Positions 20,113 through 62,036 of a stretch of DNA of 64,000 bases are shown piece by piece. The translations under genes and the position numbers were made by a program. Below the pieces are notes generated by a model, which did no database searches, had not been told where the DNA came from, and saw only the letters and a program-made list of their open reading frames with translations. Numbering within the stretch: position 1 is the first letter of the stretch; each line of letters begins with the position of its first letter. The DNA lies in the IMG/VR virus record IMGVR_UViG_3300046703_000335, positions 146,409-210,408 of that record; one strand, given 5' to 3'.

Positions 20113-20571
20113 TTATTCTTCGTTATCTTCTTCTTCGATCTCAAGTACTAACTCAACAGTAAACTTGATCACCTTCTTATCCTCATCAATATCTGGCATA
20201 TAATCAACCTGGTCTTCCCAGATATAATCATCAAAATCCTGATTCAAATCTGATATATCAAGATTAGCATATTTTTCTTTAAGAAAGGATGATAGTTTTG
20301 GATTGATCATTTTTTTAAGATCACCATCATGATCATCAACCCAATCCTGAAGTATTCTATTAAGTACCCTATAACTGTCCGGTGGTATACCATCATAAGT
20401 TATATGGATATCTGCCCATACTTCAATATTTGCTGAGAATTCCTCATCATTGTTTTCTACAACATTTTCTTCATCGATATCAATGTTTTCAAACTCAATA
20501 AAAGAGGCTTCTTTTAGCTTAAAATTTTCAGAAGCTTTTTTAGCCATAAAATCAACAACAGATGCTCTCAT
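20113..20571 (-). CDS. Acidic hypothetical protein
   Basis: 152 aa; KKAS and KEAS near the N-terminus. Confidence 0.55.
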   Translation of the reverse strand: MRASVVDFMAKKASENFKLKEASFIEFENIDIDEENVVENNDEEFSANIEVWADIHITYDGIPPDSYRVLNRILQDWVDDHDGDLKKMINPKLSSFLKEKYANLDISDLNQDFDDYIWEDQVDYMPDIDEDKKVIKFTVELVLEIEEEDNEE

Positions 20572-37242: not shown

Positions 37243-39252
37243 TTAGCGAGCTATCTTAACCCTTGTAATTGCCAATGGGTTATGGCACCCAATACCTAAA
37301 TTTTCGAAGACTGAAAATCCTATTCTTCTTGCCTTTGGATCATCAGCAGATAGTACTGTAAGTTCGGTACGTACAGGAATGCGCCCGAAAAATTCTGGTT
37401 CTGCGCAAACATAAGCATAACCAGGATTAACTTTTCTGCTGACGATGATCTGAGCACCCCAAACGGTACCAAGTAGACCACTCTTAAGCAATGTCCCTTG
37501 AGTTTCAATATCAAGAACGTCTCTTCCCCATTTTCTTAAATCTGCAAAGTCAAGAGCGTTCATGAAAATACGAGCAACTCGAAGATCATGAGTCTCAATA
37601 CGTGCAAAAGCGTCAATCAAGTTTGCAGGTGTAAGAGGAGCAACAGCATTGATCTGTGCGTTTACATATGCACTTCCAAGATTGTCAAAACCAAACTGAG
37701 AAACTGCATCCATAACATCAAAGGCACGTGCATCTTCAGCAGCTTGAATTTGAGCTTTTGCCAAATCCTGTGCGCGTTCGATAAGGTCAAAACGACGTTC
37801 TTTGATCTGTGTCAAAGGCAGTTCAGGATTCGATGCTATTTCGAAAAGAGGGAATATCACACGGCGAGGTTTTGTGATCGCCAGAATGTTTTCACCTTCT
37901 TCTCCGACAACGAAAGCAGTGACGTTAGGATCTTTGTCGTAAATTGGCAGCGCACCATCAGGGAGCTGTTCTACGAGAAAAGCCTTACGTGCAACTGACG
38001 TATAATCTCTGCGAAGACGCAGAGGCTGGATCCACTTTGTTACTACCCTATTTAAGGGCGTATGAGTCTTTCAACTCATATCTCATGGTTACCCATGAGT
38101 TCAGACTGTATCACTACCTGTTATATACAGGTACTCGGCATGTCTTGACAAATTACTCTGTCAAGGTAGGTCTTATCGCCATTACCAAAACTTGGTATTA
38201 GGCTTCCCTCAGTCGTTGAACCTTCAATGGGGTTTCCCCCAAAGCTTGGCTGCTGATTGTCCTTTGAACGATATCTCTTAGGTAACTTATAGATCAAATC
38301 ATTAGTAATATTATCACGGATATACTCATAAGCAGTATCTCTTGATTCCTTCAAAACCCTAATATGGCATTCACCATCAGAGTTCTCAGTAACACTTACA
38401 ACCAGGTTTAAAACATCCTTAAAGATATCTATAACCAGTTCTTTGTTGTTTTTGAAAAAGCTATCATAAGACACTATAGTAAACCCGTAATCACCAACCG
38501 CCCCATCATCCATCCACCAAAAAGACAACCCTACACCAGTAAGTTCACTTAGTAGTTCAGCACTCAGTACCTTTGTACCTTCAGGATAAAACTTTTTTCT
38601 TAACTCTGTAAATTGATGCAAGGCATAACTCCTTGCATCAACATATGAAAAAAGTTCTCCACCGGATATAAAAGCTCTTTCACCATAAAATACTTTAGCA
38701 GTAAAAAGGCTTCATTATCTCTGCTTTTCTAAGCAATAGTTGCTCTTGTTTCACACTATGCCTACAAAGCCAATATCCAGTCCCAGATGATTGTACTGCA
38801 ATGCAGGAATCCCCAAACAAACTCCCATGCAGAAATTCTTTCTGATAGCTATTTAACGGAACCAATCTTAATGCGTTACGATTCAAATGATAGCCCTTAT
38901 TTGTACTAATACCATAGATACTTCTTAAGGTACAAACTACTCTATCAGTTAAACCATATTTTTCACCTATCTCAATATCGCATAAACCAGCATTGATGTA
39001 CTCTTCAACAAGCACATCTTCCGGCAAAACACTTATAAGTCTTGCCAGTTTCTCTTCGCTGATTATTACGTTATTGATCTTCATACCTACCCATCGTTCA
39101 AAGGATGTTCCAGACAATTTACCGAGTTTTACGTCCACCATCCAGAATCAATTAATGGACGCCGCTAACTTTGCACGGCCAGAAGCAGTCTTAATGTAAT
39201 CTCCAATGATCTGTTGTTTCAGTTCATTAGTGATTGTGTTTGTTCCTTCCAT
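37243..39252 (-). CDS. Major capsid protein (HK97 fold), 295 aa after splicing: exon 1 39252-39155, exon 2 38032-37243
   Basis: Exon 1 MEGTNTITNELKQQIIGDYIKTASGRAKLAAS+AT (AGGAGG RBS) joins G+IQPLRLRRDYTSVARKAFLVEQLPDG.. in frame with track ORF 37243..37860 (IFMNALDFADLRKW, GTVWGAQIIVS, GFSVFENLGIG); follows protease, scaffold and decoration genes. Confidence 0.9.
38033..39154 (-). ncRNA. Group I intron (1122 nt) in the major capsid gene
   Basis: 5' exon ends in U pairing with G of IGS GTGGACGT (P1); CTGGAT pairs with 3' exon ATCCAG (P10); P AAATTGTCTGGAA, Q AATCAGCAGCC, R TTCAACGACTGA, S GATACAGTCTG; P3 CTCGGTA/TGCCGAG; P9 hairpins; terminal G. Confidence 0.9.
38121..39084 (-). pseudogene. 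Intron-encoded HTH-LAGLIDADG homing endonuclease split by a 1-nt frameshift near 38705
   Basis: Motif 1 FLHGSLFGDSCI in ORF 38695..39141, motif 2 LSFWWMDDGAV in ORF 38121..38621; removing one T from CCTTTTTAC gives a continuous 320-aa frame (..MKPFTAKVFYGERAF..YALHQFTELRKKFY). Confidence 0.75.
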
Positions 39253-39331: not shown

Positions 39332-39910
39332 TTAGATCGAAAGCTGAACAACCATAAATGGATCAGTTGCACTTGGAGCAATCAATACGATACCAACTAC
39401 GAAAGCTGCAACATCAACAGCTGTACTAACAGCATTGCTGAGCAAGCCATTCTGAGAAACATAAAGTCTTGCACCAGGAAGATATGTGATAGGAACTCCG
39501 GCACCAGCCTGAGTACATGTCTCATACATATCTGTTGAGAAAACGGTACCTGTTCCATGTAAATATGGGCATTTACCACTTGCTACACCAGAGCTTGACT
39601 CGAAAGGATAACCAACAGCGTTATTAATCGCAACACCAACTGGGCGACCAACAAGAACTGATGGAGCTGCATCTGTACCTGTACATGCTACGACTGTTCC
39701 GTTCACTGTTCCAACACATACAAACTGACCTGCAAGAATACCCTTAGGTGTGTCAGCACTAAGACGAGAATTCGCCAAAGATTGAACATTTGCACCGTAG
39801 TTATCTCTTGTCAGTCCAGCCGCTGTCAGATTCATGAGAGTATTCATTGTCACGCGATTGAGGATATTTAGGCCTCTATCAGGGGCAATTCCACTTCCTT
39901 CACCAACCAT
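39332..39910 (-). CDS. Head decoration/cement protein
   Basis: Between scaffold and MCP; SGVASGKCPYLHG..TDMYE..GARLYVSQNGLL..VGIV beta-rich pattern. Confidence 0.65.
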   Translation of the reverse strand: MVGEGSGIAPDRGLNILNRVTMNTLMNLTAAGLTRDNYGANVQSLANSRLSADTPKGILAGQFVCVGTVNGTVVACTGTDAAPSVLVGRPVGVAINNAVGYPFESSSGVASGKCPYLHGTGTVFSTDMYETCTQAGAGVPITYLPGARLYVSQNGLLSNAVSTAVDVAAFVVGIVLIAPSATDPFMVVQLSI

Positions 39911-40031: not shown

Positions 40032-41039
40032 TTAATTAAAAATTTCTCTTACATCCGGAGCAGTAGACCATAGACTTGATAAGTCACTGGAACCACTTGA
40101 AGAAGCTTCTTTCTTAACCATACCGGAAAGTTTTGAAGCACCCTTCTTGATAGGAGAAGGCATAACACCACTGAAAATCTGATCAAGAAGACTTGCATCT
40201 TTTGATGAGCCTTCTTCTTCATCTTCTTCTTTTTTATCCTTGGAGGAAGCTTCGACTTCTTCTTCATCTTCTTCTTTTTTGGCAGAAGCTTCGACTTCTT
40301 CTTCGTCTTTGCCTACTTCTTTTTCAAGCTCTTCAGCTTGCTTTTTCAGGCTGGCAAGTTTTTCTTTTTTCTTTTTAATGTCCAGATCCTTAGTGCCGGC
40401 TTCTTTTTCTTTCTTATCATCTTCGTCTTTGTCGGCAGAGGCATCCTTCTCTTCTTTATCCTTATCATCTTCATCTTTGTCAGCAGAAGCATCCTTCTCT
40501 TCTTTATCCTTGTCATCTTCATCTTTGTCAGCAGAAGCATCCTTCTCTTCATCTTCTTCATCAGAAGAATCAGAAGCAGCTTTTGCGATCATCTGAGCGA
40601 GACCTTCTTGGTTTGCAAGAGTCGCATTAAGGCCCTCTTCAGGAAGATGCATAAGAATACCCGCCTGCTTCTCGATAATCTCGTCTGTAGCACCAGGAAG
40701 CATTCTCTGTGAAGCAATAATAGCTTTGACAGCTTTCTCTTCAAGTCTACGAGCACTTGCGATAGCTTCTTGAGCAGCATGTTTATCAATAAGAGGAGCA
40801 TGACCAGTCTCTTCACGTTTCTGATCATCTTTATTTACTTTGTCTTTATTAACGCCTTCATTCCATGCTTCAGGATCACCCTTAGCATATTCACCGACAC
40901 TTGGATTATTCTTGCTGTGTCCAGTATCATTCATATCAAAAACATCATTGTCAATTCCAGAACCCTTATCTTCAACTTGGGCACCTGGTTTTGACTTCAT
41001 ATCCGAAGCTAATCTGTTAGTCAAACGATTACGAGACAT
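40032..41039 (-). CDS. Probable capsid scaffolding protein
   Basis: Highly charged and coiled-coil, between protease and decoration/MCP; C-terminal LSSLWSTAPDVREIFN. Confidence 0.65.
   Translation of the reverse strand: MSRNRLTNRLASDMKSKPGAQVEDKGSGIDNDVFDMNDTGHSKNNPSVGEYAKGDPEAWNEGVNKDKVNKDDQKREETGHAPLIDKHAAQEAIASARRLEEKAVKAIIASQRMLPGATDEIIEKQAGILMHLPEEGLNATLANQEGLAQMIAKAASDSSDEEDEEKDASADKDEDDKDKEEKDASADKDEDDKDKEEKDASADKDEDDKKEKEAGTKDLDIKKKKEKLASLKKQAEELEKEVGKDEEEVEASAKKEEDEEEVEASSKDKKEEDEEEGSSKDASLLDQIFSGVMPSPIKKGASKLSGMVKKEASSSGSSDLSSLWSTAPDVREIFN
40413..40550. repeat. 48-bp tandem repeat x3 coding EEKDASADKDEDDKDK
   Basis: gcatccttctcttc recurs at 40441, 40489 and 40537. Confidence 0.85.
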
Positions 41040-41109
41040 GCTTGTCCTCCTGTGTCAATTTATTTATGAAGTTCTAATGAACTTGGTTGTTTTCAGAGAA
41101 AAAACAGAT

Positions 41110-41124
41110 ATTAAGAGATTATTA
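41110..41124 (-). promoter_or_regulatory. Putative late promoter motif, perfect copy (scaffold-decoration-MCP unit)
   Basis: ATTAAGAGATTATTA, 71 nt upstream of ATG 41039. Confidence 0.7.
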
Positions 41125-41136
41125 TAAAAAAGTTTT

Positions 41137-43989
41137 TTACTCTTCAAATTGAGATAAAATCTTAGCCCATGAAGCTAACTTTTTACACTCTCTCTGACTT
41201 GGCTTGCGACCTATCTCAACTATCATCTTTGTGAAAAAGGGCACCATTCCTGTTGATCCAAGTTTGACTCTGGATAAAGTCTTAACTGCATCTGTACCAA
41301 CAGGGATATTAGAAGCATTCTTATCTATAAAGTGCAATATCCCTAAAACATCATCACGAGTGTACCCATACTTTTTAAATTGTTTCCAATTCTTAGTATT
41401 AGATAAAATCATAATACCATTGTACAGCCGATCATTTTTTGTATCTCTTGCAGAAGCTAAAATCTTTTTAAAACTAGCGGACTTGTTCACTAAGTTATCA
41501 TTTGTAGAAGTCTCTTCATCCGAAGGACGTCCACTATCTCCGCCATCTTGCTTAGCCTGATCCTTCATGATCTCTCTACGAATCTGATTAAGCAATTGTC
41601 TCTTTACCATATCTTTTACTTCACCGACTGTAGCATCCTCTTTAGGTTCTTCTATCTGAGGTTCCGGAGCTGCTGCGGGAGCACCACCCAAACCACCACC
41701 AAGATCATCACCAGGAGCACCCATAGAATCCGCAGGAGGAGCTGCTCCCTCTGCTGGAGGGGTATCTACGGTAAGAGGCTTATCTGCTTCTGGGGGAGCT
41801 TCAGGGAAGCTGAAATCATCTTTTGGAGGAGCCGGTGCATCGCCTTCAGCAGCTTCAAGATCTCTTACGATATCCTTTGCTGATTGAGCTGCTGACTTCA
41901 GGTACATTCCCGGGGTATAATCAAACCCTGGCATAACTACAGCTTTTTGTATCTTATCAGATACGTCAAAATCACAAGGAAGAACTTTATGAAGCACTGC
42001 CCCTTCAAAGGCAGGTTTACGTACCCAACTTGCATCTATAAATTTACAACTCTCAGGGTCGTCAACGCTGCCACATAATTCTGCTATTATCCTTTTTGTA
42101 CCATTCTTATCATAGAAATAATTACCTTTAAAATATTTTATATGCTTGCAAGATTGGGACTCATCTTCAGCTATACAACCGCACTGTGTACAGATACTAT
42201 ATTTTATCAAGCATCCCATTGACACAGCGGAATATTCACCAGATTGAATCTTATTTACAAGATCTGTATGCTTCTTATTAGTAGCTATAAGGATATCTAC
42301 GTACAGAGAAGTAAGGTCATTACCGTTTACATCTTTTGCAAAGGGTACCTCTCTCAAAGCCATATCAATAACTTTGCCTTTTGACAATTCAGAGATCTGG
42401 ACGTGTTCACAGTTATGCACTGTTACACCTTCAGCAACATAAGAGTTATCCCCTTCAACCTCTATGTTATAAACATCAAAAGTACCTTCTAAATCTCTTA
42501 TTCCATCTATTTTAGATATAGTCCATTTATTCCCACCATCTTCAAATACATGGGTTATCTTTTTAGATAATCTATCTGAAATCCTGGTATCTGTATGTCC
42601 TACAATTTCATTTAACTTTTTAGAATCCCTTGTAGATATCCTTAAAAAATATCCAGGTCTTGACTTCTTATTAGTAATTGGGTCTGTATATACTTCATAC
42701 CCATCAATTAACTCACAATCTGTATATCTCGGTAAAACCCCAACTTCCCTATAATTCGGAAGTATCCCCATTCTCCAAAACATCCAGTTAATTTGTTGAA
42801 TTAACGCTTGTGATTTAAGCTCTAGGCAATAACCTCTTGAGGTATGCTCTCCACACCCATCTCCATTAATACAATGCTTAACTATTATAGCCTGTAATTT
42901 TTTGGGGAGCCACATTGCCTCTTCTGGCATTTTTTTAGCCCAGGAATATTTACCACACCACTTCTTAAAAAACTGAGCTACTTCCTTATTACTAATTGAT
43001 AGGCAGTATGATCCTGATTGAGTTTCATACAATCTTGGTTTGCAATCTATTCTAAAAGTACTTCCAAATTCTTTTATTAATAGATAGGATAGCCTTTCAG
43101 CTACATCAGTCTCTTCATTACCAAGGGCAAAGGTTACTCCTGACTCTTCATCAGAAAAGACATTCTTATTATCATAATAACCTTCGGCAAGAAACCACCC
43201 TATTAACTCCGCTCTAGCTTCATTTATCTCATCATTAGGAATTTCGACTAACGATACAGGATGAGTAAAGAAATCTCTATCAGAATTAATATCCCCAGCA
43301 TTTTTCCATTCTGATGTTATCCCCCTTGGGTAAACTTCACCGGATGCTCTATGCACTCCGACAGAAAAACCTGTCCAGGTATCTAATAAACCAAAATTTG
43401 CATCTTTATCAAAAAAATTAGGACGACCTGTTTTTGGACAAGTCTCACGAGCATGGTATACCCAAAAAGGGTGATTTCTAGTTACGCATATTTTCCTAGA
43501 GAGAATATTCAGACCTGACATCTCTACTAAGTTATCAGCCTGATGCTTAAAAGTTCTTGTTACTTTTCCTATTTCACCCTTACGATTTATAACCCTATCA
43601 CCTTCGACTACCTGTTCTATAGCTTTATACGTACCATCAGCCATTAATACCCGTGTACCTGCTACAAAACAAAAATTATCAGCCCCAAGAAAACTCTTTG
43701 AAGCCATCCTCAATAATTTGGTTTCCCAGCTGTCTCCATTATTATTTACAAAAATTGAATATTCAGGTTTGATCAGATAGTTACTCTTAGGATCTTTTGG
43801 ATCAGCTAAGTCGACATCTACTGAGGCCATTATAGAAACATGACTAAGTAGCCATTTGGATGGATCAAACTGAGCTACAACATTTTTTGCTACAACAATG
43901 CGACCTTTTGGAACAACATTGTCCACCCATTTACCAGGGCAGACAACTTTATTCACTACAGCAGCATGTCCAAATTTAAGCATTGCCAT
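41137..43989 (-). CDS. Prohead (maturation) protease, intein-containing; about 530 aa after splicing
   Basis: NNNGDSW, F|CEH (probable catalytic His), AVSMGC (Ser), CTQCG..CKH, DASWVRKPAFEGA. Confidence 0.8.
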   Translation of the reverse strand: MAMLKFGHAAVVNKVVCPGKWVDNVVPKGRIVVAKNVVAQFDPSKWLLSHVSIMASVDVDLADPKDPKSNYLIKPEYSIFVNNNGDSWETKLLRMASKSFLGADNFCFVAGTRVLMADGTYKAIEQVVEGDRVINRKGEIGKVTRTFKHQADNLVEMSGLNILSRKICVTRNHPFWVYHARETCPKTGRPNFFDKDANFGLLDTWTGFSVGVHRASGEVYPRGITSEWKNAGDINSDRDFFTHPVSLVEIPNDEINEARAELIGWFLAEGYYDNKNVFSDEESGVTFALGNEETDVAERLSYLLIKEFGSTFRIDCKPRLYETQSGSYCLSISNKEVAQFFKKWCGKYSWAKKMPEEAMWLPKKLQAIIVKHCINGDGCGEHTSRGYCLELKSQALIQQINWMFWRMGILPNYREVGVLPRYTDCELIDGYEVYTDPITNKKSRPGYFLRISTRDSKKLNEIVGHTDTRISDRLSKKITHVFEDGGNKWTISKIDGIRDLEGTFDVYNIEVEGDNSYVAEGVTVHNCEHVQISELSKGKVIDMALREVPFAKDVNGNDLTSLYVDILIATNKKHTDLVNKIQSGEYSAVSMGCLIKYSICTQCGCIAEDESQSCKHIKYFKGNYFYDKNGTKRIIAELCGSVDDPESCKFIDASWVRKPAFEGAVLHKVLPCDFDVSDKIQKAVVMPGFDYTPGMYLKSAAQSAKDIVRDLEAAEGDAPAPPKDDFSFPEAPPEADKPLTVDTPPAEGAAPPADSMGAPGDDLGGGLGGAPAAAPEPQIEEPKEDATVGEVKDMVKRQLLNQIRREIMKDQAKQDGGDSGRPSDEETSTNDNLVNKSASFKKILASARDTKNDRLYNGIMILSNTKNWKQFKKYGYTRDDVLGILHFIDKNASNIPVGTDAVKTLSRVKLGSTGMVPFFTKMIVEIGRKPSQRECKKLASWAKILSQFEE
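42412..43671 (-). mobile_element. Intein (420 aa) with LAGLIDADG endonuclease in prohead protease
   Basis: Starts CFVAGTRVLMADG; block B TRNHPFWV; LIGWFLAEG and HCINGDG; ends YVAEGVTVHN followed by Cys. Confidence 0.9.
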
Positions 43990-44010
43990 TATATAAAATC
44001 CTTATTGCTA

Positions 44011-44565
44011 TTAAGCCTTAATGCTCTTATAGATTTTGCTGACAGCAGATCTCATAAGACCATCGGAGCAGATATTAGAATACCGAGGATACAAACTCTG
44101 ATAAGCTTGTATGTCCGTCAGACCTTTACTGACACATGCAACGACATCATTAGCCAATTTTGTCACGACATTATCAGCAAAGTTACCTGCTACCTTAGAA
44201 GCCATCCCAGACATACGCTTTTTAGCGGCTTCTTTAGAGGTCATCTTACTTGCCATTTTTTTAATCTTATCCTGAAGAGTACCGTAATTCTCATCAGAAA
44301 TAGTCTTATCAAAACTACCGTAACCTGTATCTTCACCAACCGGAGAAGTACCTACAAAAGGTGTAATCAGAATAAGCTCCGTAGGATCTTTCTGCTGATT
44401 ACCTCCCATAGGAAAATCTACCCACACCTTATTTATTGCGGGACATACTTGAGTCACCACACCAACATAAGGTGATATAGATTTCTCACTGGTGAACCAT
44501 TTTACCTGATCACCAATTTTATAGTTCTCTGCCGATCCTGATGGATGAGGGTATAAACCTGGCAT
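44011..44565 (-). CDS. Hypothetical head-region protein, SH3-like N-terminus
   Basis: YKIGDQVKWF..VGVVTQV..VWVDFP; KMAS, KEAA and KVAG motifs. Confidence 0.55.
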   Translation of the reverse strand: MPGLYPHPSGSAENYKIGDQVKWFTSEKSISPYVGVVTQVCPAINKVWVDFPMGGNQQKDPTELILITPFVGTSPVGEDTGYGSFDKTISDENYGTLQDKIKKMASKMTSKEAAKKRMSGMASKVAGNFADNVVTKLANDVVACVSKGLTDIQAYQSLYPRYSNICSDGLMRSAVSKIYKSIKA

Positions 44566-44583
44566 GATTACTATCCTTTCGCC

Positions 44584-45207
44584 TTATTTAGCTATCTGGT
44601 ATGGGAAACTAGAAGCATCCTTACCGAGCTGTTTTTTCTGAAACTTATCTTTAAGCTCCGTACTGGTATCTGTGTTGTATTCTTTCATGTAAGGTTCATC
44701 GCTGTCTGTCTCACGGGCACCAGCATGAAAGAACTGCTTCATGTATGGTTCGTCACTATCACTCTCAAGAGTGGAAGCTTCTTTTCTACCTTCAAGGACA
44801 TCAGAGACTCTATCGAGTTCGTAAGCAAGTTTTGTAAGTTCAGGGTCATTCTGAGATTCAAGAAGACCGGCTATCTGATCAAGAGATTCTGCCACTTTTG
44901 CAGCAGCTTCTTTTTCTTTCTTTTTCTTATCAGAATCTTTCTTGTCGTCCTTCTTGTCATCCTTCTTTACATCATCTTTTTTAGTATCGCCACCCTTTAT
45001 CTTTTTCTTACATTTAAGGCAGTAGCTTGTGGCTTTTAAAACTTTTGAGCCGCAGTCTGGGCATTTAATCATATCAGCTTTACCAGCTTCTTTTTCAGTA
45101 GCCTTTTCTTTTTCGTCCTCGTCTTCATCTTCACCTGCGAGCACTTGAAGTGCAGCCAATTTACGACGAGTAGCTTCGATTTCACTCTTGATAATAGACT
45201 TGTCCAT
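44584..45207 (-). CDS. Charged zinc-ribbon protein, probable head-internal
   Basis: CPDCG..CLKC; LDQIAGLLES..KLAYELDRVSDVLEGRKEAS; duplicated E(S/T)DSDEPYMK. Confidence 0.6.
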   Translation of the reverse strand: MDKSIIKSEIEATRRKLAALQVLAGEDEDEDEKEKATEKEAGKADMIKCPDCGSKVLKATSYCLKCKKKIKGGDTKKDDVKKDDKKDDKKDSDKKKKEKEAAAKVAESLDQIAGLLESQNDPELTKLAYELDRVSDVLEGRKEASTLESDSDEPYMKQFFHAGARETDSDEPYMKEYNTDTSTELKDKFQKKQLGKDASSFPYQIAK

Positions 45208-45242
45208 CCTAATCCTCCTTAAAAACCTATGTCAAATTATTA

Positions 45243-45659
45243 TTACGACTTTAGCAAGTTATCCATTAAGAGACTATATGTGGATGCATTGATTTTATTA
45301 GCATATTTACCATCATCTAATGTAGCAATAGCCCTTGTTAAGGCATCTTCCATAGCCACTCTCTCATCATATTCCTTCATTGGGGCATCTACAATCTTTT
45401 TTGCATGTTTGGATATCGCATGAAGATCCTCATTCTTAACATCATATTGAGTTCTAGGCATGATAGATGCTTCAGTACTTAAGTCCCCGCGAGGAACCAT
45501 AGCCTCAATGACCGTTTCCCCATTTTTATTGTGAAAAAGATCACGGGCGCTAAAAAGAATCTCTGGATGATTTGCTAAAAGATCCTTAGCTTTTTCACGA
45601 GCGGAGTCTTTTTCACCAGGCTGTACCTTAAGGCTTTTTTTATCTTCAGTTTTTGACAT
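45243..45659 (-). CDS. Hypothetical protein
   Basis: 138-aa ORF with GGGG RBS. Confidence 0.55.
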   Translation of the reverse strand: MSKTEDKKSLKVQPGEKDSAREKAKDLLANHPEILFSARDLFHNKNGETVIEAMVPRGDLSTEASIMPRTQYDVKNEDLHAISKHAKKIVDAPMKEYDERVAMEDALTRAIATLDDGKYANKINASTYSLLMDNLLKS

Positions 45660-45705
45660 AAATTCCCCAATAAATGGAACGACAAGATGTTATTACAATT
45701 CTAAT

Positions 45706-45720
45706 ATTAATACATTATTA
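45706..45720 (-). promoter_or_regulatory. Putative late promoter motif copy
   Basis: ATTAATACATTATTA, 47 nt upstream of ATG 45659. Confidence 0.5.
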
Positions 45721-46026
45721 AAAATCTGTACTACTAGACAGAAACTGATTGATCACGCTTGTGGTTGTTTCCTTACTAACATTCCCTGCAAATCTGTCAC
45801 TGCTATAGTACTGTTCTGTCACTGCCCTCTCCATGTAACTCTTGAAAAGCTCAAGATCATTACGTAATTCCATAGCTTTCGTTCGAATCTTAGTGAGAGG
45901 TTCAAGAAAATCCTTACCATAATTTTCAACCTTAATTTTCTTATTATCAATAAGAGTATTTACACTTTCAATAACTCCAGAAACAATCTCTATCTGCTTG
46001 ATAAGTTCTTTTGGTGGCTTAGGCAT
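45718..46026 (-). CDS. Hypothetical helical protein
   Basis: 102 aa, AGGAG RBS. Confidence 0.55.
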   Translation of the reverse strand: MPKPPKELIKQIEIVSGVIESVNTLIDNKKIKVENYGKDFLEPLTKIRTKAMELRNDLELFKSYMERAVTEQYYSSDRFAGNVSKETTTSVINQFLSSSTDF

Positions 46027-46043
46027 ATCACTAATCTCCTTAT

Positions 46044-46400
46044 TTAAACTTTAAATTTTTTCTTATAAGTACTCTTTGGGCCGTCAACTTCTTTATCCTT
46101 ACCCTCTGCTCGATACTCAGTTATATAATCTTTCATAAGTCCTGTCTTAGTCTCCTCATTCCATTTATTTTTATGACCCGGTTGCTTCCTGGGTCTCCTC
46201 TGCTGAGAAGGGGCTGTAGGAGTTGTTTCCTCAATATCAACATTTTTTGGTTTCACTACCTGCTTTTTCTTTTCTACAGGTTGTTCTTCCCTACCCCCCT
46301 CAAGCATCTTATGATCTCCAATTGAGGTATCCTCTGGAGTATTATCCCGCTCTATAAGGGAAGCCAGTTTTCGAATCTCATCAGATATCAAAAATTTCAT
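46044..46400 (-). CDS. Hypothetical protein with N-terminal helical tag
   Basis: MKFLISDEIRKLASLIER; directly after portal. Confidence 0.55.
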   Translation of the reverse strand: MKFLISDEIRKLASLIERDNTPEDTSIGDHKMLEGGREEQPVEKKKQVVKPKNVDIEETTPTAPSQQRRPRKQPGHKNKWNEETKTGLMKDYITEYRAEGKDKEVDGPKSTYKKKFKV

Positions 46401-46403
46401 AAG

Positions 46404-49400
46404 TTAACCCTTAGACATATATTCAGCTATTTTATCCAACTTTTCAGGATGCTTCATAACTACAGAAATAAGTTTAGTTAATGCTGCCTGTTTCTTACTA
46501 TCTAACCCTGCAGAAGAAAATCTACCCATACCTCCACCGCCAAGACCCCCACCGCCAAGACCCTCGCCTAACCCGCCCTCTTCCCCAGCAGGTGGTGGTG
46601 GAAGCGGATCAAGATTAAGATACTCAGCAAGTCGATCAGCCACTGTAAATCGTTCGACCAGCGCCTGTCCTGCGGCACTATAGATATTTGCCAAAAGTTG
46701 ATTGAATGCAAAGTCATTGACTGTGAACAAATCAGCTTCAATCTTTTTACGAGTAGAAATAGGATCGATATTAAGCATCTCAAGGATCACATCTATGGAA
46801 ATTGATCCTTTATTATAAAGCTGCATAGCCTGGTCAAAGAAAGTATCGTTATCTTTGATAGCAAGACGTGTAAAGCTTAATCGTGGATATATAAGTTTTT
46901 CTCTTCCGTATTTATCCTTCTCAATAAAACCTTTTTTTCTCGCCACAGGTTTAAAGAGATAATCCTCAACATATTCCTGAAGGAGTTCCCGGAATAAGAG
47001 GTACTGGGTATTTAGAATCTCGAGAGTCATCTTATTACCCGCATATGTACCTTCACCGGTCAAAATCTCTCGGGTAACTCCAAGACCTGCAAATAAGCTA
47101 TTCTCAATGTGCTCATACTCACTGGAGAGTTCTAAGAGACGACCATTTGAACCCATTTCTTCCCAGTGAACTTCATAGTTGGCAATGATAGAGAAGTCGG
47201 GATCAACAAGAGCAGTGTCCACTTGTTCCCTTAAATTCTCGATATCCACATCAGATAACTCTTCAGCCCATACTACCCGTATTGGGGTCATATGCCGGGA
47301 TGCTATCTGTGTCTGAGCCTGACGAAGCTTATCCTGTAGTAGTAACGAGTTAATACATCTTTCAAGAATTGATACTCCAAGAGTCTCATATTGACTTTTT
47401 TTACGAGCCATATGATAAACATATGACCCACTGTATGGATCAGTATCAAGAGGGATACTACCATTCTGTTGAAGATCCATAGAGAGTGACTTGGGTAATC
47501 GTGGCATGGCACTCTCCTCTTCCGGACTAAGCGGGAAGTAGGCAGGATCCTGCGAACTGAGAATACTCTTACGGGTTTCCGGATCAGGAATAAATTCTAT
47601 AAGGCTCTCATCCGAAAAAGGAATCTTTTTGATACGGACCTGGTCAGGTGGGAGGATTATTAACTTTCTCCAGCCCTTATAATTTGGATCCTTATCAATA
47701 ACTTTAAATTCTTTGAAGAGTCTCTCAGACTCTATTCTTCCCCACTCCTTAAGCTCTGCTACTTTAGCTTTACCCTCTTCATTACCCTCATCTACTTCAT
47801 ATGGGTTGTGGTCCTCCGCATAAGTAAAACAGTTGTGCGTGCTATATCCTGCTACCTGATATGTATGATCCTCTTCCACTTCAAAGTTATAAACGAAGTC
47901 ATTATAAGCTGTCTCTTCTATTGTTTTAACTTTAAATGCTATATCCCCATCAATATTAATCCAATATCTATTATCATCAGGGAAATGAGCATCATCAGGT
48001 AGGCTCTTATTAGAATATTGGGTTAGTATGTCACAGGAAGTTTCATCAGAGGCAGTTAATATATATGCATCTCTTACTACTTTTAGGGTACCATTTGGAA
48101 GAACGCATTCCCTGTTAGAAAAGTGATTTAAGCTACACACAGCACCACATTTAAGAGAGATATCCCTAATATTATCGATTAAACCTTTTGAGACCGTGGT
48201 ACAAGAAACAATAGTATGTCTTTTAGGACCCGCCACAGTGACACACCCATCTGAATCAACAATCCCTGCTAAAAAGTTCTTTAACTTTTCGATAGGTAAA
48301 TTTATAAACCACTCAGGTATCCTTTTTAGATTTTTACCAAGAGATGTTTCACCAAAGTTACTTGACCACCACTCTATAAATGCAGGGTTAGAATTTACTT
48401 TAAGATAAGTCATCCCCTCACATGTCCATACTTTTATAGCATCGATACCAAAGATCTTTATTAATATTCGATATAATCTATCGATTTCTATTACACATGT
48501 TTCTTTAGCAGATATCTGCCACAAACCTCTACCCCAGTTACTACGTGAGGAATCCCGAGAGAGAGTTCCATCCCCAGCCCAGAAACCTACTAAATAAGCG
48601 AAATCATCATCTATCTCAAGAGTATCTATTGCATTTAGAAACTTCTGTCTCTTATGTATGTACGTACCAGTAATTTCAATACTGGAGGTATCCGTTGGTA
48701 GCCATCTTACTTGTGATCCTTTTTGATATCCTTTAGCTCCTATCCGCTCATGAAACTTAGTATCTATAATCTCCTGTAATGAACTCACAGCAGCATTTAA
48801 TGATCGTAAGGGCACATCAAAAAGTTCAGCGAGTTCTTGATGAGTTTTTATTATAGGTTCTTTTAAAGCATTAAGCCAATTTAAAAGTCCTTTTTTAGCA
48901 GTAATCGCTTTTTCTGATCTTGGCTGATTTATCGTAACATTTGATATATATCCCCCATCAACTTTTGTATAGGTTGATGGAAAACTAAGAGGCAATTCAT
49001 GTACATCTGACACCTCTACAGGCCATGTTACTCTTATGTAGTCTTTTAAAGTTAAATCTTCAGCTTCAATAAAGATAAATTCCCCGTCTCTAAATACCTC
49101 TACAGGGTGCTCTCCTGTAATGGGTAACTCTTTAAATGTCTTCCAGGTATTTATCTTATATATAGTATCTGAGGGTCTACAAAATTTATTAGTTACTTTT
49201 CGATATCTTCCTTTATTCGTTAGTAGATAATCACCGATAGCTACTTCATCAGCTCTTTTAATGCCTGATAGCGTCTTTATTTCAGCGTAATTAGCCAGGC
49301 AATTACCTAACAAATGGTATTCGTGGCTTATCTCGAGTAAGGTCTTAAAAAGCTTGGTTTCACTACATAATTCTAAAAAGAACTCATATACATAGTCAAT

Positions 49401-49829
49401 CTGTTCCTGATTATCCCCATGAGGTTTTTCAAGCCTAATTTTAGACAAAGGAAGAGTAGAATGGAGATCGATCGCCTGTCCTACAAACTCATTTGCATTA
49501 TAAAAGTTTCGATACCAGGCGCGTCGTTCTCGTAAATTTTGCGGTTTCTCAAGAAAGTCAGTAGATAGCTGAGGAGAATAAAAGTTACCTTGAGAACTCT
49601 CTGATGTACCACCACTACTATAGCCTCCACCAGAAAAAGCTGAGCGGGTATTAAACCCAAAATTACTTGTAGTAGCATACTTTTTTATCTTACGTACTGC
49701 TTTTTCTTTTTCAGTAAGTTTTGAGGAAGGCATAATGTTATCCCCATTCTTTACTGTGGCAGCAGTCTTTATCGTGGCAGCAGTCTTAGAGCGTACAGTT
49801 GTTTTAGTACGAGTTCCTTCTTTATTCAT
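46404..49829 (-). CDS. Portal protein, intein-containing; about 651 aa after splicing
   Basis: FYSPQLSTDFLEKP..WYRNFY..VGQAIDLHSTLPLS..HEYHLLGN|CF; GVSILERC; GLGVTREILTGEGTY; position upstream of protease. Confidence 0.85.
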   Translation of the reverse strand: MNKEGTRTKTTVRSKTAATIKTAATVKNGDNIMPSSKLTEKEKAVRKIKKYATTSNFGFNTRSAFSGGGYSSGGTSESSQGNFYSPQLSTDFLEKPQNLRERRAWYRNFYNANEFVGQAIDLHSTLPLSKIRLEKPHGDNQEQIDYVYEFFLELCSETKLFKTLLEISHEYHLLGNCLANYAEIKTLSGIKRADEVAIGDYLLTNKGRYRKVTNKFCRPSDTIYKINTWKTFKELPITGEHPVEVFRDGEFIFIEAEDLTLKDYIRVTWPVEVSDVHELPLSFPSTYTKVDGGYISNVTINQPRSEKAITAKKGLLNWLNALKEPIIKTHQELAELFDVPLRSLNAAVSSLQEIIDTKFHERIGAKGYQKGSQVRWLPTDTSSIEITGTYIHKRQKFLNAIDTLEIDDDFAYLVGFWAGDGTLSRDSSRSNWGRGLWQISAKETCVIEIDRLYRILIKIFGIDAIKVWTCEGMTYLKVNSNPAFIEWWSSNFGETSLGKNLKRIPEWFINLPIEKLKNFLAGIVDSDGCVTVAGPKRHTIVSCTTVSKGLIDNIRDISLKCGAVCSLNHFSNRECVLPNGTLKVVRDAYILTASDETSCDILTQYSNKSLPDDAHFPDDNRYWINIDGDIAFKVKTIEETAYNDFVYNFEVEEDHTYQVAGYSTHNCFTYAEDHNPYEVDEGNEEGKAKVAELKEWGRIESERLFKEFKVIDKDPNYKGWRKLIILPPDQVRIKKIPFSDESLIEFIPDPETRKSILSSQDPAYFPLSPEEESAMPRLPKSLSMDLQQNGSIPLDTDPYSGSYVYHMARKKSQYETLGVSILERCINSLLLQDKLRQAQTQIASRHMTPIRVVWAEELSDVDIENLREQVDTALVDPDFSIIANYEVHWEEMGSNGRLLELSSEYEHIENSLFAGLGVTREILTGEGTYAGNKMTLEILNTQYLLFRELLQEYVEDYLFKPVARKKGFIEKDKYGREKLIYPRLSFTRLAIKDNDTFFDQAMQLYNKGSISIDVILEMLNIDPISTRKKIEADLFTVNDFAFNQLLANIYSAAGQALVERFTVADRLAEYLNLDPLPPPPAGEEGGLGEGLGGGGLGGGGMGRFSSAGLDSKKQAALTKLISVVMKHPEKLDKIAEYMSKG
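47832..49301 (-). mobile_element. Intein (490 aa) with LAGLIDADG endonuclease in portal
   Basis: Starts CLANYAEIKT; ITGEHPV; LVGFWAGDG and LAGIVDSDG; ends YQVAGYSTHN followed by Cys. Confidence 0.9.
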
Positions 49830-60131: not shown

Positions 60132-62036
60132 TTATTCAAGGTGGCTGTCAATACCCTCATTGTTAAGGTCAATGACAGATTCACTTGGAGATGCTTCACG
60201 TATATTATCCAGAGCTATATTCATCCCTGATCCAAAATCATCAGACATATCATATTTTTGATTAATATCCTCACGCTCTACATCAGGATTTTCATTAAAT
60301 TGTACTTTAACTATAACTTCTTCAACAGATGGTTTTTCTCCATTAGCTTCCTTTAAGTCAAAAAAGGCTTTATCAAGATTAATACTACCGATAAAATCAG
60401 TTGACTGCTTAATGCAACTTGAAGCACCTTTAAGTACACACTCCTTACATTTCTCAGTGGGCTTAATTGAAGCTGTTTTACTAAGATCATATCTCTCGTA
60501 AGTACATTTTGACAAGCAATCCGCACTAATTTCAGGAATATTAGCTATAACATTATGTACCATACCAACAGCCTCAGATGTACCAACTATCGATGCAACT
60601 TTATCTTCAATACGATCAATAGCTACACCTGCTTCGATAGCCTTTATAATATTCTTTTTAAGACCTACATGATCAAGAGCTTGTTTGCTCACTACTGGTG
60701 CAGCAACCCCCTGCACACCTCCCATACGAACATCTTTCTTATGAAGTAATGATGCATCAAAAGCTTCTTTTATAACATTTAAATTACATTCCCCATTTAG
60801 TACTTTATTTAACAGACCCTGGGAGATATTCGAAGCAATACGATTATTAGCTTGAAGATCTTTAATGTAGCTAAATGCAACTTTTTTATCCAATTTACCA
60901 TCTTCTGGTAATCCTGAGCAACCTGTAGCGCTAGCTACTTTTGCGAGAGTATTATCAAATGCATTCTGCTTAAAAGATTGTACCAGATATAATGGATTAG
61001 TACTAGCATTCTTAATAGCATAGATAGCATCTTTAGCAGTATCATAATAAGAAACATCTACATAGATGTTTCCAAGAATACCTTGTAAAGATGCCACTTT
61101 AGCGATTTCATTAGAATACTCAGCGATATGCGTTGAAGAAAATTTTTGACGAATACTCTCCTTAAGAGATTCCCCCGCTTTTCCCTTTAATAACTGATCC
61201 TGCATATAAGCAAGAAGTGGGCGTGCAGCAAAAAATCTTTGTTCCGCGGCATCCTTTTTTTGTATTGCGGCATTCTTCTCTATATGCTCAGAAAAATCCT
61301 TTTTAACTTGTGTTATATCGATTGGTGCAGCTTCTTTTGTACTAACTTCAGAATGTATCTCAGGCTGCTTTAAAAATGCTTCCCTAAGATTATCCTTAGA
61401 AGTGATAGTCTCTGACGCCCCTATCACACCAGCAATCCGAAGATGTGTGGTATATTCACTAAGAACAGGATCAGAATAATCCATTGATTCTTTGACTCTT
61501 TTATTGAGCTCTTTGCAAAAGCCATCATGATGTGAAGAGCATACTCTACGAGCAGGATTACCTACAACGTAACGAGCTGTACGAATACGATTTTTACCGA
61601 GAACTTCTGCAGCTTCATGGCAACTATCAAAAGGAGTAAGATCAATATAAACTTTTCCAAGGAGGCCCTGTTCCGCAGCAAGCTTGACAAGTTCATCTTT
61701 AGCAGCATATATCATATCAGGCAAGTATAAACTAGCGAGTTTATCTGCGAGCTTTTTCCCACTAAACCCCATCATCATTTCTTTTTTAGCCTGCTTAACT
61801 ACACCAGAGATATCTTCCTGTGAAGCTTTCTTCATGCTTTCACCGCCCTTAACGGTCGCGTTGGATACCAGACGAGTACTTGGCTCATTAGTATGAGTCC
61901 AGGCTTCCTGGAGCTGAGGAATAGATTCTACTGGGAATTCCCCGGGGATATTTTCTCTTGATAGCACTAACCAATCAAGATCAGGAATTTGAACCAAATT
62001 TTTATCTTGCTCAATTGACTTTCCAAACGCGTCCAT
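60132..62036 (-). CDS. Large head-associated protein with internal duplication
   Basis: LAAEQGLLGKVYIDL and VASLQGILGNIYVDV repeats; Cys clusters; many K-x-A motifs. Confidence 0.55.
   Translation of the reverse strand: MDAFGKSIEQDKNLVQIPDLDWLVLSRENIPGEFPVESIPQLQEAWTHTNEPSTRLVSNATVKGGESMKKASQEDISGVVKQAKKEMMMGFSGKKLADKLASLYLPDMIYAAKDELVKLAAEQGLLGKVYIDLTPFDSCHEAAEVLGKNRIRTARYVVGNPARRVCSSHHDGFCKELNKRVKESMDYSDPVLSEYTTHLRIAGVIGASETITSKDNLREAFLKQPEIHSEVSTKEAAPIDITQVKKDFSEHIEKNAAIQKKDAAEQRFFAARPLLAYMQDQLLKGKAGESLKESIRQKFSSTHIAEYSNEIAKVASLQGILGNIYVDVSYYDTAKDAIYAIKNASTNPLYLVQSFKQNAFDNTLAKVASATGCSGLPEDGKLDKKVAFSYIKDLQANNRIASNISQGLLNKVLNGECNLNVIKEAFDASLLHKKDVRMGGVQGVAAPVVSKQALDHVGLKKNIIKAIEAGVAIDRIEDKVASIVGTSEAVGMVHNVIANIPEISADCLSKCTYERYDLSKTASIKPTEKCKECVLKGASSCIKQSTDFIGSINLDKAFFDLKEANGEKPSVEEVIVKVQFNENPDVEREDINQKYDMSDDFGSGMNIALDNIREASPSESVIDLNNEGIDSHLE

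What the first reader, a model, noticed from the sequence alone, without database searches (positions are those of the whole stretch)
40032..49829. K-x-A-(S/A/G) motifs as the predicted prohead-protease cleavage code
Seen: head-module proteins are rich in K-x-A-small. Scaffold has KDAS in each 48-bp repeat, plus KEAG, KEAS, KGAS. Portal N-terminus has KTAATIKTAA, protease C-terminal region KSAA and KSAS, MCP residues 21-24 KTAS. The motif also occurs in 44584 (KEAG, KEAA, KEAS, KDAS), 60132, 62697, 20113 and 183, often at domain boundaries. Known: T4 gp21 cuts after (I/L)-x-E and phiKZ gp175 after (S/A/G)-x-E at many head proteins. Inference: this protease cleaves after K-x-A, a different specificity, and the scaffold repeat expansion multiplies cleavage sites.
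Basis: partly seen in the sequence, partly recalled or inferred. Interest (0 to 1): 0.65.

Follow-up and report, generated by a model that had tools for sequence, protein, structure and literature searches.

The report
Predicted K-x-A-S cleavage code of megaphage head protease
In this phage G-like giant phage, the short protein motif Lys-x-Ala-Ser is far more common than chance in head-assembly proteins and sits at conserved places in relatives, so it is most likely the cutting signal of the head-maturation protease, though nobody has yet observed the cuts.

Summary
K.AS was the most over-represented of about 48,000 gapped three-residue patterns in the window (39 seen, 6.9 expected, P=3e-17). 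K-x-A-[SAG] occurs 65 times against 18.6 expected. The excess survives shuffling within 10-residue blocks and uses ordinary codons. It is absent from the other 146 kb of the same contig (K.AS 12 vs 11.6).

The signal recurs in relatives. K.AS is the top pattern of its shape in a 485-kb uncultured phage and in Tunturiibacter phage Tunturi_5, is 4-fold enriched in Bacillus phage G, and totals 427 vs 113 in 55 metagenomic loci.

Sites are conserved in position:
- directly after the protease domain ([KR]-x-A in 97/97 homologues);
- before the protease's C-terminal domain;
- 15-40 residues from the scaffold C-terminus (22/24 relatives);
- at portal termini and the MCP N-terminus.

The decoration protein family has none (0 vs 6.8).

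The protease model has the herpesvirus assemblin / T4 gp21 fold (Z 10.8 and 10.2). Known enzymes of this fold cut at P3-x-P1, and herpesviruses cut at x-A|S. Best reading: cleavage at K-x-A|S, with herpes-like release and maturation sites. No cleavage has been measured. The fourth-position G and the "domain boundary" claim are weaker.

The parts
41137..43989 (-). Prohead protease precursor, 950 aa. It has an N-terminal assemblin/gp21-fold domain, a Pro/Ala/Gly-rich linker and a C-terminal domain of about 115 aa. It is about 530 aa after protein splicing.
   Evidence: PHROG 18299 'head maturation protease' E=5e-7. 120 intein-free homologues of 520-550 aa. AF2 model of a homologue's domain matches VZV protease at Z 10.8 and T4 gp21 at Z 10.2.
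42412..43671 (-). Intein with a LAGLIDADG endonuclease (precursor residues 107-526). It is inserted directly before the invariant Glu-His of the protease domain.
   Evidence: Pfam Hint, Intein_splicing and LAGLIDADG_3 hits. Alignment with uninterrupted orthologues. Boundaries C107 and HN|C527. Invariant E108-H109 in homologues.
41887..41898 (-). Protease site 1 (KSAA, precursor residue 698), right after the catalytic domain. Predicted self-release site, analogous to the herpesvirus R-site.
   Evidence: In 97 homologues K/R occupies this column in 97/97, Ala at +2 in 97/97, and Ser or Ala at +3 in 87/97, preceded by [YFL]-L. The site lies in a low-pLDDT stretch of the model.
41473..41484 (-). 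Protease site 2 (KSAS, precursor residue 836), between the linker and the C-terminal domain.
   Evidence: Conserved S-L-V-[KR]-x-A-[SAG] column: K/R in 81/97 and Ala in 78/97. Aligned with KQAS in the LR745208 orthologue.
40032..41039 (-). Scaffolding protein, 335 aa, acidic, with 11 K-x-A-[SAG] sites.
   Evidence: It lies between protease and MCP. 11 sites vs 1.4 expected. Homologues total 142 vs 36.8.
40413..40550 (-). 48-bp tandem repeat, 2.9 copies. Each 16-aa unit carries one KDAS.
   Evidence: Tandem Repeats Finder: period 48, 95% matches. KDAS at residues 166, 182 and 198.
40101..40112 (-). Scaffold C-terminal site (KEAS, residue 310, 26 aa from the end). Predicted maturation site, analogous to the herpesvirus M-site. 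A KGAS site lies 11 residues upstream (40134-40145).
   Evidence: 22 of 24 distinct relatives keep [KR]-x-A-S 15-40 aa from the C-terminus, in front of a conserved L-W..PPDVS..F tail. It aligns in LR745208 and Tunturi_5.
46404..49829 (-). Portal protein precursor, 1141 aa, with an intein at residues 177-666. Sites: KTAA at 15 and 21 (nt 49758-49787) and KQAA at 1113 (nt 46482-46493). All three lie within 30 residues of an end.
   Evidence: PHROG 16240 portal E=6e-31. Intein Pfam hits. In 44 portal homologues 26 of 50 sites fall in the terminal 80 residues, which are 12% of the length.
39151..39252 (-). MCP exon 1 (about 33 aa), carrying KTAS (residues 21-24, nt 39181-39192) and KLAA (28-31, nt 39160-39171).
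   Evidence: Translation. Intact MCPs of relatives read through this sequence. Both motif columns are kept in 32 of 39 MCPs (38 homologues plus the window's own), but not in phage G gp27.
37243..37980 (-). MCP exon 2 (HK97-fold body). It has no K-x-A-[SAG] site.
   Evidence: 74% identical to LR745208, 48% to the Tunturi_5 major head protein and 41% to phage G gp27. Site counts.
44584..45207 (-). Lys-rich 207-aa protein between portal and protease, 5 sites. Candidate internal head or core protein and protease substrate.
   Evidence: 5 vs 0.7 expected. Family 74 vs 22, with conserved columns at residues 142 and 196.
44011..44565 (-). 184-aa protein upstream of the protease, 3 sites. Candidate substrate.
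   Evidence: 3 vs 0.33 expected. Family 39 vs 6.8.
60132..62036 (-). 634-aa protein of unknown function upstream of the terminase, 12 sites. Candidate internal head protein cut into several pieces.
   Evidence: 12 vs 1.3 expected. 51 sequences (50 homologues plus the window's own) average 7.8 sites vs 1.26 expected, with conserved columns such as residue 313 in 38/51. In the AF2 model, sites 69 and 234 lie at disordered boundaries.
183..1145 (-). Lys/Ala-rich 320-aa protein with 5 sites. Possible further substrate; function unknown.
   Evidence: 5 vs 1.0 expected, P=0.003. No PHROG or Pfam family.
20113..20571 (-). 152-aa protein with two sites in its first 25 residues (KKAS 11, KEAS 20). Possible N-terminal propeptide.
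   Evidence: 2 vs 0.06 expected. Contexts.
39332..39910 (-). Probable head decoration protein (position of phage G gp26). It carries no site.
   Evidence: Synteny with phage G gp26/gp27. 41 homologues have 0 sites vs 6.8 expected.

Best explanation
K-x-A-S (then K-x-A-A, with Arg tolerated in place of Lys) is the recognition motif of the assemblin-fold prohead serine protease encoded at 41137-43989. After its intein splices out, the protease is built into the procapsid with the scaffold and internal proteins. It then most likely cuts between Ala and Ser, with Lys at P3, Ala at P1 and Ser/Ala at P1'. It frees its own catalytic domain at the site just after that domain, and separates its C-terminal domain at a second site. 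It clips the last ~26 residues (the conserved tail) off the scaffold and chops the rest of the scaffold into short peptides that can leave the shell. It trims the portal ends, possibly the first ~23 residues of the MCP, and processes several small Lys-rich proteins and ORF 60132. Shown: the enrichment, its restriction to the structural module, its recurrence in relatives, the positional conservation and the protease fold. Inferred: that the motif is cut, which bond is cut, and which individual sites are used.
For: K.AS ranks first of about 48,000 patterns (39 vs 6.9, P=3e-17). The excess survives whole-protein and 10-residue block shuffles. There is no DNA-level bias and no enrichment in the other 146 kb of the contig. 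The same motif is the top pattern of its shape in LR745208 and Tunturi_5, 4-fold enriched in phage G, and totals 427 vs 113 in 55 IMG/VR loci. Protease homologues keep [KR]-x-A right after the domain in 97/97 and a second site before the C-terminal domain. The scaffold site 15-40 aa from the C-end is kept in 22/24 relatives even where the flanking register shifts by one residue. Portal sites cluster at the termini and MCP sites at the N-terminus. The external decoration protein has 0 vs 6.8, and TerL 3 vs 7.3. The fold matches VZV protease (Z 10.8), T4 gp21 (Z 10.2) and HCMV protease (Z 8.3). Known relatives use a P3-x-P1 rule: SPN3US A-x-E with Ser favoured at P1' (PMC10052503), and pseudorabies R-site YLQA-T and M-site VQA-S, the M-site near the scaffold C-terminus releasing it from the MCP (PMC4498786). 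Positive control: the same scan puts I.E first and L.E third in T4 genes 20-24 but not in neighbouring genes.
Against: No mature N-terminus, peptide or gel shift has been seen for any phage of this clade; the phage G virion proteomics paper could not be read. Many sites in ORF 60132 lie inside confidently predicted helices. The two MCP motifs sit in a conserved N-arm segment that may be kept for structural reasons, and they are missing in phage G gp27. The phage G candidate scaffold gp21 has no site. Thirteen related loci show little overall K.AS excess, although their scaffold tail site is kept. No Pfam peptidase family matches. The catalytic His and Ser are inferred from invariance, not from a residue-level superposition. 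The complex prediction gave no verdict.
Confidence: 0.72

Rival explanations
1. The motif marks cleavage, but the scissile bond or the enzyme differs. The cut could fall after the Lys (K|x-A-S, as in the Lys-Ser cut of the HK97 capsid protein, recalled from memory). At site 1 it could fall after the first Ala in a herpes-like Y-L-K-A|A register. A second protease, from host or phage, could also do the cutting.
For: Site 1 reads [YFL]-L-[KR]-A-A-S in most homologues, which also fits the herpes R-site pattern Y-L-Q-A|T one residue earlier. Lys or Arg is the most strictly kept residue besides Ala.
Against: Across sites, Ala is fixed two residues after Lys while the residue between them varies freely. 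This fits a P3-x-P1 reader better than a P1-Lys enzyme, which would not need Ala-Ser downstream. Sites flank the assemblin-fold protease's own domain, as expected for self-processing.
Confidence: 0.12
2. K-x-A-S is a functional short motif that is not cut. It could be a capsid-targeting or core-assembly contact, or a modification site on Ser or Lys, for example for the large glycosyltransferase encoded in the same module.
For: Many ORF 60132 sites lie in stable helices, and two belong to a duplicated K[LV]AS.QGLLG module. A 1373-aa multi-glycosyltransferase lies at 21767-25888. The MCP motifs are in a conserved structural segment.
Against: The positions mirror known protease sites: after the protease domain, about 25 aa from the scaffold end, and at portal termini. 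The motif is richest in proteins that are removed from mature heads (scaffold, protease) and absent from the surface decoration protein, the opposite of what virion surface modification predicts.
Confidence: 0.12
3. The enrichment is an artefact of composition, low-complexity repeats or shared ancestry of the compared loci.
For: Three scaffold sites are copies of one repeat. The 55 IMG/VR loci are related, so pooled counts are not independent.
Against: Removing two repeat copies leaves 37 K.AS vs 6.9. Block shuffles that keep local composition give z of about 11. Permuted motifs are not enriched. The rest of the same genome shows none. Sites recur in non-homologous proteins, and in scaffolds too diverged to align outside the tail.
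Confidence: 0.03

Closest known systems
Herpesvirus assemblin (pUL26 / VP24) with its release (R) and maturation (M) sites
   Same: The fold is shared (VZV Z 10.8, HCMV Z 8.3, KSHV Z 6.8). Both have a small P1 Ala followed by Ser. Both have one site immediately after the protease domain and one near the scaffold C-terminus, which in herpesviruses detaches the scaffold from the major capsid protein (PMC4498786).
   Different: Here Lys or Arg occupies the place of the aliphatic P3 residue. Protease and scaffold are separate genes rather than nested in-frame genes. The scaffold carries many sites rather than one. The protease domain carries a Cys/His zinc-ribbon-like insertion and, in this genome, an intein. 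No sequence-level similarity was detected.
T4 gp21, phiKZ gp175 and SPN3US gp245 prohead proteases
   Same: The fold is shared (T4 gp21 Z 10.2, 125 residues aligned). All use a P3-x-P1 motif and process themselves. The scaffold or core is degraded at many sites, portal and MCP are trimmed, and internal head proteins are processed (PMC10052503). The motif is statistically enriched in head genes (T4 control).
   Different: P1 is Glu in those phages (I/L-x-E, S/A/G-x-E, A-x-E) and Ala here. No x.E pattern stands out in this window; K.A is the top two-residue pattern.
Bacillus phage G gp19 and Tunturiibacter phage Tunturi_5 gp331 (annotated head maturation proteases)
   Same: They are orthologues of the catalytic domain (42-44% identity over it). 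K-x-A-[SA] sites lie just after the domain (KVAS and KIAS in gp19, KVAS in gp331). K.AS is enriched in their head modules.
   Different: They are about 290-300 aa and lack the long linker and C-terminal domain, and have no intein. The phage G MCP and its candidate scaffold gp21 lack the motif. No cleavage specificity was found reported for them in the papers searched.

Membership tests
Assemblin-fold prohead serine proteases (herpesvirus protease / T4 gp21 / HK97 gp4 type) | Characteristic beta-barrel fold | tested here: met
   AF2 model of an intein-free homologue 89% identical over the protease domain (pLDDT 78; 85-96 across the core). Against 48,161 PDB representatives the top hits were VZV protease Z 10.8, T4 gp21 Z 10.2 and HCMV protease Z 8.3, with unrelated folds from Z 6.8 down. 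Foldseek alone was weak, E 0.02-0.08.
Assemblin-fold prohead serine proteases (herpesvirus protease / T4 gp21 / HK97 gp4 type) | Catalytic His and Ser conserved | tested here: inconclusive
   His109 (in E-H, directly after the intein insertion point), Ser170 (in S-M-G-C) and His50 are invariant in 56 homologues. I could not obtain a residue-level superposition on the T4 or herpesvirus catalytic residues.
Assemblin-fold prohead serine proteases (herpesvirus protease / T4 gp21 / HK97 gp4 type) | Sequence membership in a curated peptidase family (Pfam S78/U35, U9, S21) | tested here: not met
   No Pfam peptidase hit for the exteins searched separately or for three uninterrupted orthologues, even at E up to 1. 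No PDB sequence hit with a family profile. Only PHROG 18299 'head maturation protease' at E=5e-7.
Assemblin-fold prohead serine proteases (herpesvirus protease / T4 gp21 / HK97 gp4 type) | Gene placed between portal and scaffold/MCP | tested here: met
   The order portal, small ORFs, protease, scaffold, decoration, MCP is seen in the window and in relatives.
Assemblin-fold prohead serine proteases (herpesvirus protease / T4 gp21 / HK97 gp4 type) | Demonstrated proteolysis of head proteins | not testable with these tools
   This needs proteomics or biochemistry. No relevant data were found in the papers held.
Herpesvirus-type x-A|S site architecture (R and M sites) | P1 Ala and P1' Ser at sites | tested here: inconclusive
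   The motif has invariant Ala followed by Ser, then Ala, Gly or Asn. The scissile bond itself has not been observed.
Herpesvirus-type x-A|S site architecture (R and M sites) | Aliphatic P3 (V/L/I) | tested here: not met
   The position two residues before Ala is Lys or Arg: 97/97 at site 1 and 81/97 at site 2.
Herpesvirus-type x-A|S site architecture (R and M sites) | One site directly after the protease domain and one near the scaffold C-terminus | tested here: met
   Site 1 is present in 97/97 protease homologues. The scaffold tail site is present in 22/24 relatives.
T4 / phiKZ-type P3-x-Glu cleavage code | Glu at P1, with enrichment of I/L-x-E or S/A/G-x-E in head proteins | tested here: not met
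   The two-residue scan of the window puts K.A first (142 vs 92.5). Of the x.E patterns only F.E reaches the top five (fifth, 71 vs 50, P=3e-3). The same scan finds I.E and L.E in T4.

The most novel reading that the evidence does not exclude
A large clade of mostly uncultured 200-500 kb phages (phage G, Tunturi_5 and hundreds of metagenomic contigs) uses an assemblin-fold protease that keeps the herpesvirus-like Ala|Ser scissile pair and the release-site and maturation-site layout, but reads Lys at P3. If so, the K-x-A-S density of an ORF would serve as a sequence-only predictor of which unknown proteins are packaged inside the head and processed, such as ORF 60132, the small ORFs between portal and protease, and ORF 183.
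Probability: 0.5. Interest if true: 0.65.

Novelty: new variant of a known kind. Interest (0 to 1): 0.58.

Why it matters
Prohead protease specificities are known by experiment for only a few phage groups, among them T4 and the phiKZ/SPN3US group. For megaphages, almost all uncultured, nothing is known about head maturation. A sequence-readable cleavage code would let one predict the mature ends of portal, MCP and protease. It would also predict how the scaffold is removed, and which proteins of unknown function are internal head cargo, directly from metagenomes. The Ala-Ser pair, together with release-type and maturation-type site positions, would add a functional link between phage and herpesvirus capsid maturation beyond the shared fold. 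The prediction can be tested at once in two cultured relatives, phage G and Tunturi_5.

Tried and rejected
- **Pfam and PDB sequence searches for the protease.** Pfam scans of the precursor, of the two exteins searched separately by reference, and of three uninterrupted orthologues found no peptidase family. A family profile against PDB sequences gave only a chance zinc-ribbon match.
- **Foldseek against the PDB.** Only weak rows (E 0.02-0.08), although herpesvirus proteases and T4 gp21 recurred. The exhaustive aligner settled the question.
- **Complex prediction.** Protease domain with the last 65 residues of the cognate scaffold (locus L008) gave no verdict (score 0.12, mark 0.34). This is not evidence either way.
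- **ORF 60132 identity.** No PHROG or Pfam family, no Atlas lead, and no BFVD structural match.
- **Literature.** The phage G cryo-EM and proteomics paper (PMC7316594) is not held. The 2025 phage G multi-omics paper gives no cleavage data and has no held supplements. Searches for a reported K-x-A-S or Ala-Ser phage protease motif found nothing.
- **Bixzunavirus I3.** This phage has a more distant MCP relative. K.AS is not enriched (4 vs 2.0), so the code does not obviously extend there.
- **DNA-level explanation.** A methylation or regulatory word read in frame was rejected on codon usage.
- **Sites in the first 30 residues.** Only a weak trend across all window ORFs (9 of 65, P=0.09), although it is strong for the portal and MCP families.
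- Not used.

Full report
**What the window is.** The window is the last 64 kb of a 210-kb contig. It encodes, almost entirely on the minus strand, the structural module of a phage G-like giant phage.
- The second exon of the major capsid protein (MCP) is 74% identical to a 485-kb uncultured phage (LR745208). It is 48% identical to the major head protein of Tunturiibacter phage Tunturi_5 and 41% identical to Bacillus phage G gp27.
- The gene order is portal (46404-49829), four small ORFs, ORF 44011, protease (41137-43989), scaffold (40032-41039), probable decoration protein (39332-39910), then MCP.
- Portal and protease each carry a LAGLIDADG intein.
- The MCP gene is split after about 33 codons by an intron.

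The excess is large:
- K-x-A-[SAG] occurs 65 times in 19,953 residues of non-overlapping ORFs, against 18.6 expected from per-protein shuffles.
- I scanned all 8,000 residue triples in six spacing patterns without prior choice. K.AS came first by many orders of magnitude: 39 observed, 6.9 expected, P=3e-17. K.AA was also raised (18 vs 6.2).
- Shuffling only within blocks of 10 to 50 residues, which preserves local Lys/Ala/Ser richness, leaves z at about 11-12. Permuted versions (K.SA, SA.K, KA.S and others) occur 4-9 times.
- Codons at the sites follow the genome's general usage, with both Ser codon families used. The signal is therefore in the protein, not the DNA.
- The other 146 kb of the same contig holds 36 vs 29.9, and exactly the expected number of K.AS (12 vs 11.6).

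Two refinements apply. Ser is the dominant fourth residue, followed by Ala, while Gly is not clearly enriched on its own. One protease site (KNAG 229) lies in the intein.

**Is it found elsewhere?**
- K.AS is the top pattern of its shape in the 40-kb head regions of LR745208 (18 vs 4.8) and Tunturi_5 (14 vs 3.7). It is four-fold enriched in phage G (8 vs 1.9).
- A profile of the protease domain found 393 related viral contigs, of which 80 were fetched.
- In the 55 fetched loci of at least 12 kb, K.AS totals 427 vs 113 expected and is the single best pattern in 13 of them. These loci are related, so pooled P values are not independent.
- Thirteen loci show little overall excess, yet they keep the scaffold tail site.
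- A more distant MCP relative, mycobacteriophage I3, shows no K.AS excess.

**Where the sites sit.** Their positions are what make cleavage the best reading.
1. *After the protease domain.* In 97 intein-free protease homologues, the residue just after the catalytic domain is Lys or Arg in 97/97. Ala follows two residues later in 97/97, then Ser or Ala in 87/97, all preceded by [YFL]-L. The window's KSAA 698 is this site.
2. *Before the protease's C-terminal domain.* A second column, S-L-V-[KR]-x-A-[SAG], lies at the end of the Pro/Ala/Gly linker (Lys/Arg 81/97, Ala 78/97). The window's KSAS 836 is this site.
3. *Near the scaffold C-terminus.* The gene after the protease keeps [KR]-x-A-S 15-40 residues from its C-terminus in 22 of 24 distinct relatives, ahead of a conserved L-W..PPDVS..F tail. 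The K-x-A-S unit is preserved even where its distance to the preceding hydrophobic residues shifts by one. The site also aligns in LR745208 and Tunturi_5, whose scaffolds are otherwise barely alignable.
4. *Portal termini.* Portal homologues have 26 of 50 sites within the terminal 80 residues, which are 12% of the length. Many carry R-T-R-V-x-K-T-A-[SA] near residue 15.
5. *MCP N-terminus.* MCP homologues have 64 of 67 sites in the first 40 residues, in two columns each kept in 32 of 39 sequences (38 homologues plus the window's own).
6. *By family.* The scaffold (142 vs 36.8), ORF 44011 (39 vs 6.8), ORF 44584 (74 vs 22), ORF 45243 (55 vs 15.3) and ORF 60132 (7.8 per protein vs 1.26) are enriched. 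The decoration protein (0 vs 6.8), ORF 52016 (0 vs 3.9) and the terminase (3 vs 7.3) are not.

**The enzyme.** The 950-aa ORF is a precursor. A 420-residue intein sits between Phe106 and Cys527, directly in front of an invariant Glu-His.
- Pfam and PDB sequence searches do not place the exteins or uninterrupted orthologues in any peptidase family.
- Only PHROG 18299 'head maturation protease' matches.
- An AlphaFold2 model of the domain of an 89%-identical intein-free homologue (pLDDT 78, core 85-96) was compared with 48,161 PDB representatives.
- The best matches were varicella-zoster virus protease (Z 10.8), T4 gp21 (Z 10.2) and cytomegalovirus protease (Z 8.3). Unrelated folds start at Z 6.8.
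- His50, His109 and Ser170 are invariant. I could not verify by superposition that they are the catalytic residues.
- The domain also has a Cys/His zinc-ribbon-like insertion.

**Mechanism proposed.** Characterised enzymes of this fold read a P3-x-P1 motif.
- SPN3US gp245 cuts after A-x-E and prefers Ser at P1' (PMC10052503).
- Pseudorabies assemblin cuts YLQA|T at its release site and VQA|S at its maturation site. The maturation site lies near the scaffold C-terminus and frees the scaffold from the MCP (PMC4498786).

By analogy I place the cut between Ala and Ser: Lys at P3, a free P2, Ala at P1 and Ser/Ala at P1'. Site 1 then plays the role of the release site and the scaffold tail site that of the maturation site. 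The remaining ten scaffold sites would break the scaffold into peptides of roughly 10-85 residues that can leave the shell.

The three KDAS-bearing repeat units do add sites. Close relatives with the repeats have 10-13 sites, while more distant scaffolds have 4-5. Whether the expansion was selected for this reason is inference.

The enrichment, conservation and fold are shown. The cutting itself, the bond cut, and the use of any given site are inferred.

**Control for the method.** The same composition-corrected scan on T4 genes 20-24 ranks I.E first (29 vs 13.8) and L.E third (26 vs 15.1). Neighbouring non-head genes show neither. Motif enrichment in head genes therefore does recover a known prohead protease code, and the signal here is much stronger than in T4.

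**Points against, or unresolved.**
- No cleavage product has been observed in this clade. The one paper likely to hold phage G virion peptide data is not in the library.
- In the AF2 model of ORF 60132 (pLDDT 73), only sites 69 and 234 lie at disordered domain boundaries and 520 and 536 in loops. The other eight are inside helices, and two belong to an internally duplicated K[LV]AS.QGLLG module.
- The two MCP motifs lie in a conserved N-arm segment and are absent in phage G gp27. MCP trimming is the least secure prediction.
- Phage G's candidate scaffold gp21 has no site.
- A complex prediction of protease domain with scaffold tail gave no verdict.

**Comparison and novelty.** The system works like the known assemblin-fold maturation proteases. 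The structural test for that fold is met. The curated sequence families are not matched, and the catalytic residues remain unconfirmed.
- It is not a T4/phiKZ-type Glu-specific code: K.A, not an x.E pattern, leads the window scan.
- It resembles the herpesvirus A|S sites in P1, P1' and site placement, but has Lys/Arg instead of an aliphatic P3.
- I found no report of this specificity for phage G, Tunturi_5 or any other phage in the literature available.

I class it as a new variant of a known kind. I put the confidence that K-x-A-S is the protease's cleavage motif at about 0.72. The full reading (cleavage motif, cut specifically at Ala|Ser, and site density usable as a predictor of internal head cargo) I put at about 0.5.

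Noticed in passing
window 42412-43671 (-), 47832-49301 (-), and within 56112-59360 (-): Three head-assembly genes carry large in-frame insertions. The protease (aa 107-526) and portal (aa 177-666) have LAGLIDADG inteins. The terminase ORF is about 440 aa longer than its LR745208 orthologue, and its BLAST match is split into 24-147 and 571-1082, which suggests a third intein. The protease intein sits immediately before the invariant Glu-His.
   Followed up: partly
window 37861-39150 (-): The MCP gene is interrupted after about 33 codons. There is a sub-threshold Rfam group I intron match at 38082-38340 (29 bits, E 6e-5). Two endonuclease-like ORFs lie at 38121-38621 and 38695-39141. Relatives such as L008 have an uninterrupted 295-aa MCP.
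   Followed up: partly
window 39332-39910 (-) and 41 homologues: The probable decoration protein family has no K-x-A-[SAG] at all (0 vs 6.8 expected). This may reflect avoidance of the motif in a protein that must stay intact.
   Followed up: partly
window 60132-62036 (-): This 634-aa protein of unknown function has 12 sites and an internal duplication (K[LV]AS.QGLLGN.Y[IV]D near residues 118 and 313). It has several invariant Cys. No family or structural match was found.
   Followed up: partly
protease domain, homologue residues ~173-200 (window C-extein): An invariant Cys-x-x-Cys ... Cys-x-His cluster is inserted in the assemblin-fold domain, resembling a zinc ribbon. The only PDB sequence match was to ribosomal protein L32's zinc ribbon, at chance level. 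I know of no other prohead protease with such an insertion.
   Followed up: no
window 21767-25888 (-): A 1373-aa protein with at least three glycosyltransferase domains lies inside the structural module. It might modify virion proteins.
   Followed up: no
window 34476-37058 (-), 16287-18422 (+), 6278-7636 (-): The structural module is dense with homing-endonuclease-type ORFs (LAGLIDADG, HNH) fused to or next to methylase and Mom-like domains.
   Followed up: no
loci L023, L028, L032, L038, L041, L044, L045, L057 and others: A subset of related contigs shows little overall K.AS excess but keeps V-K-Q-A-S in the scaffold tail. Two of them have many K-x-A-[SAG] sites in the scaffold (7 and 10) and a raised K.AA count (8 each). 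The P1' preference may have drifted within the clade.
   Followed up: partly
whole contig G000 (210,408 bp): The contig is about half the size of its nearest relatives (363-497 kb), and the window ends at the contig end. The genome is probably incomplete.
   Followed up: no
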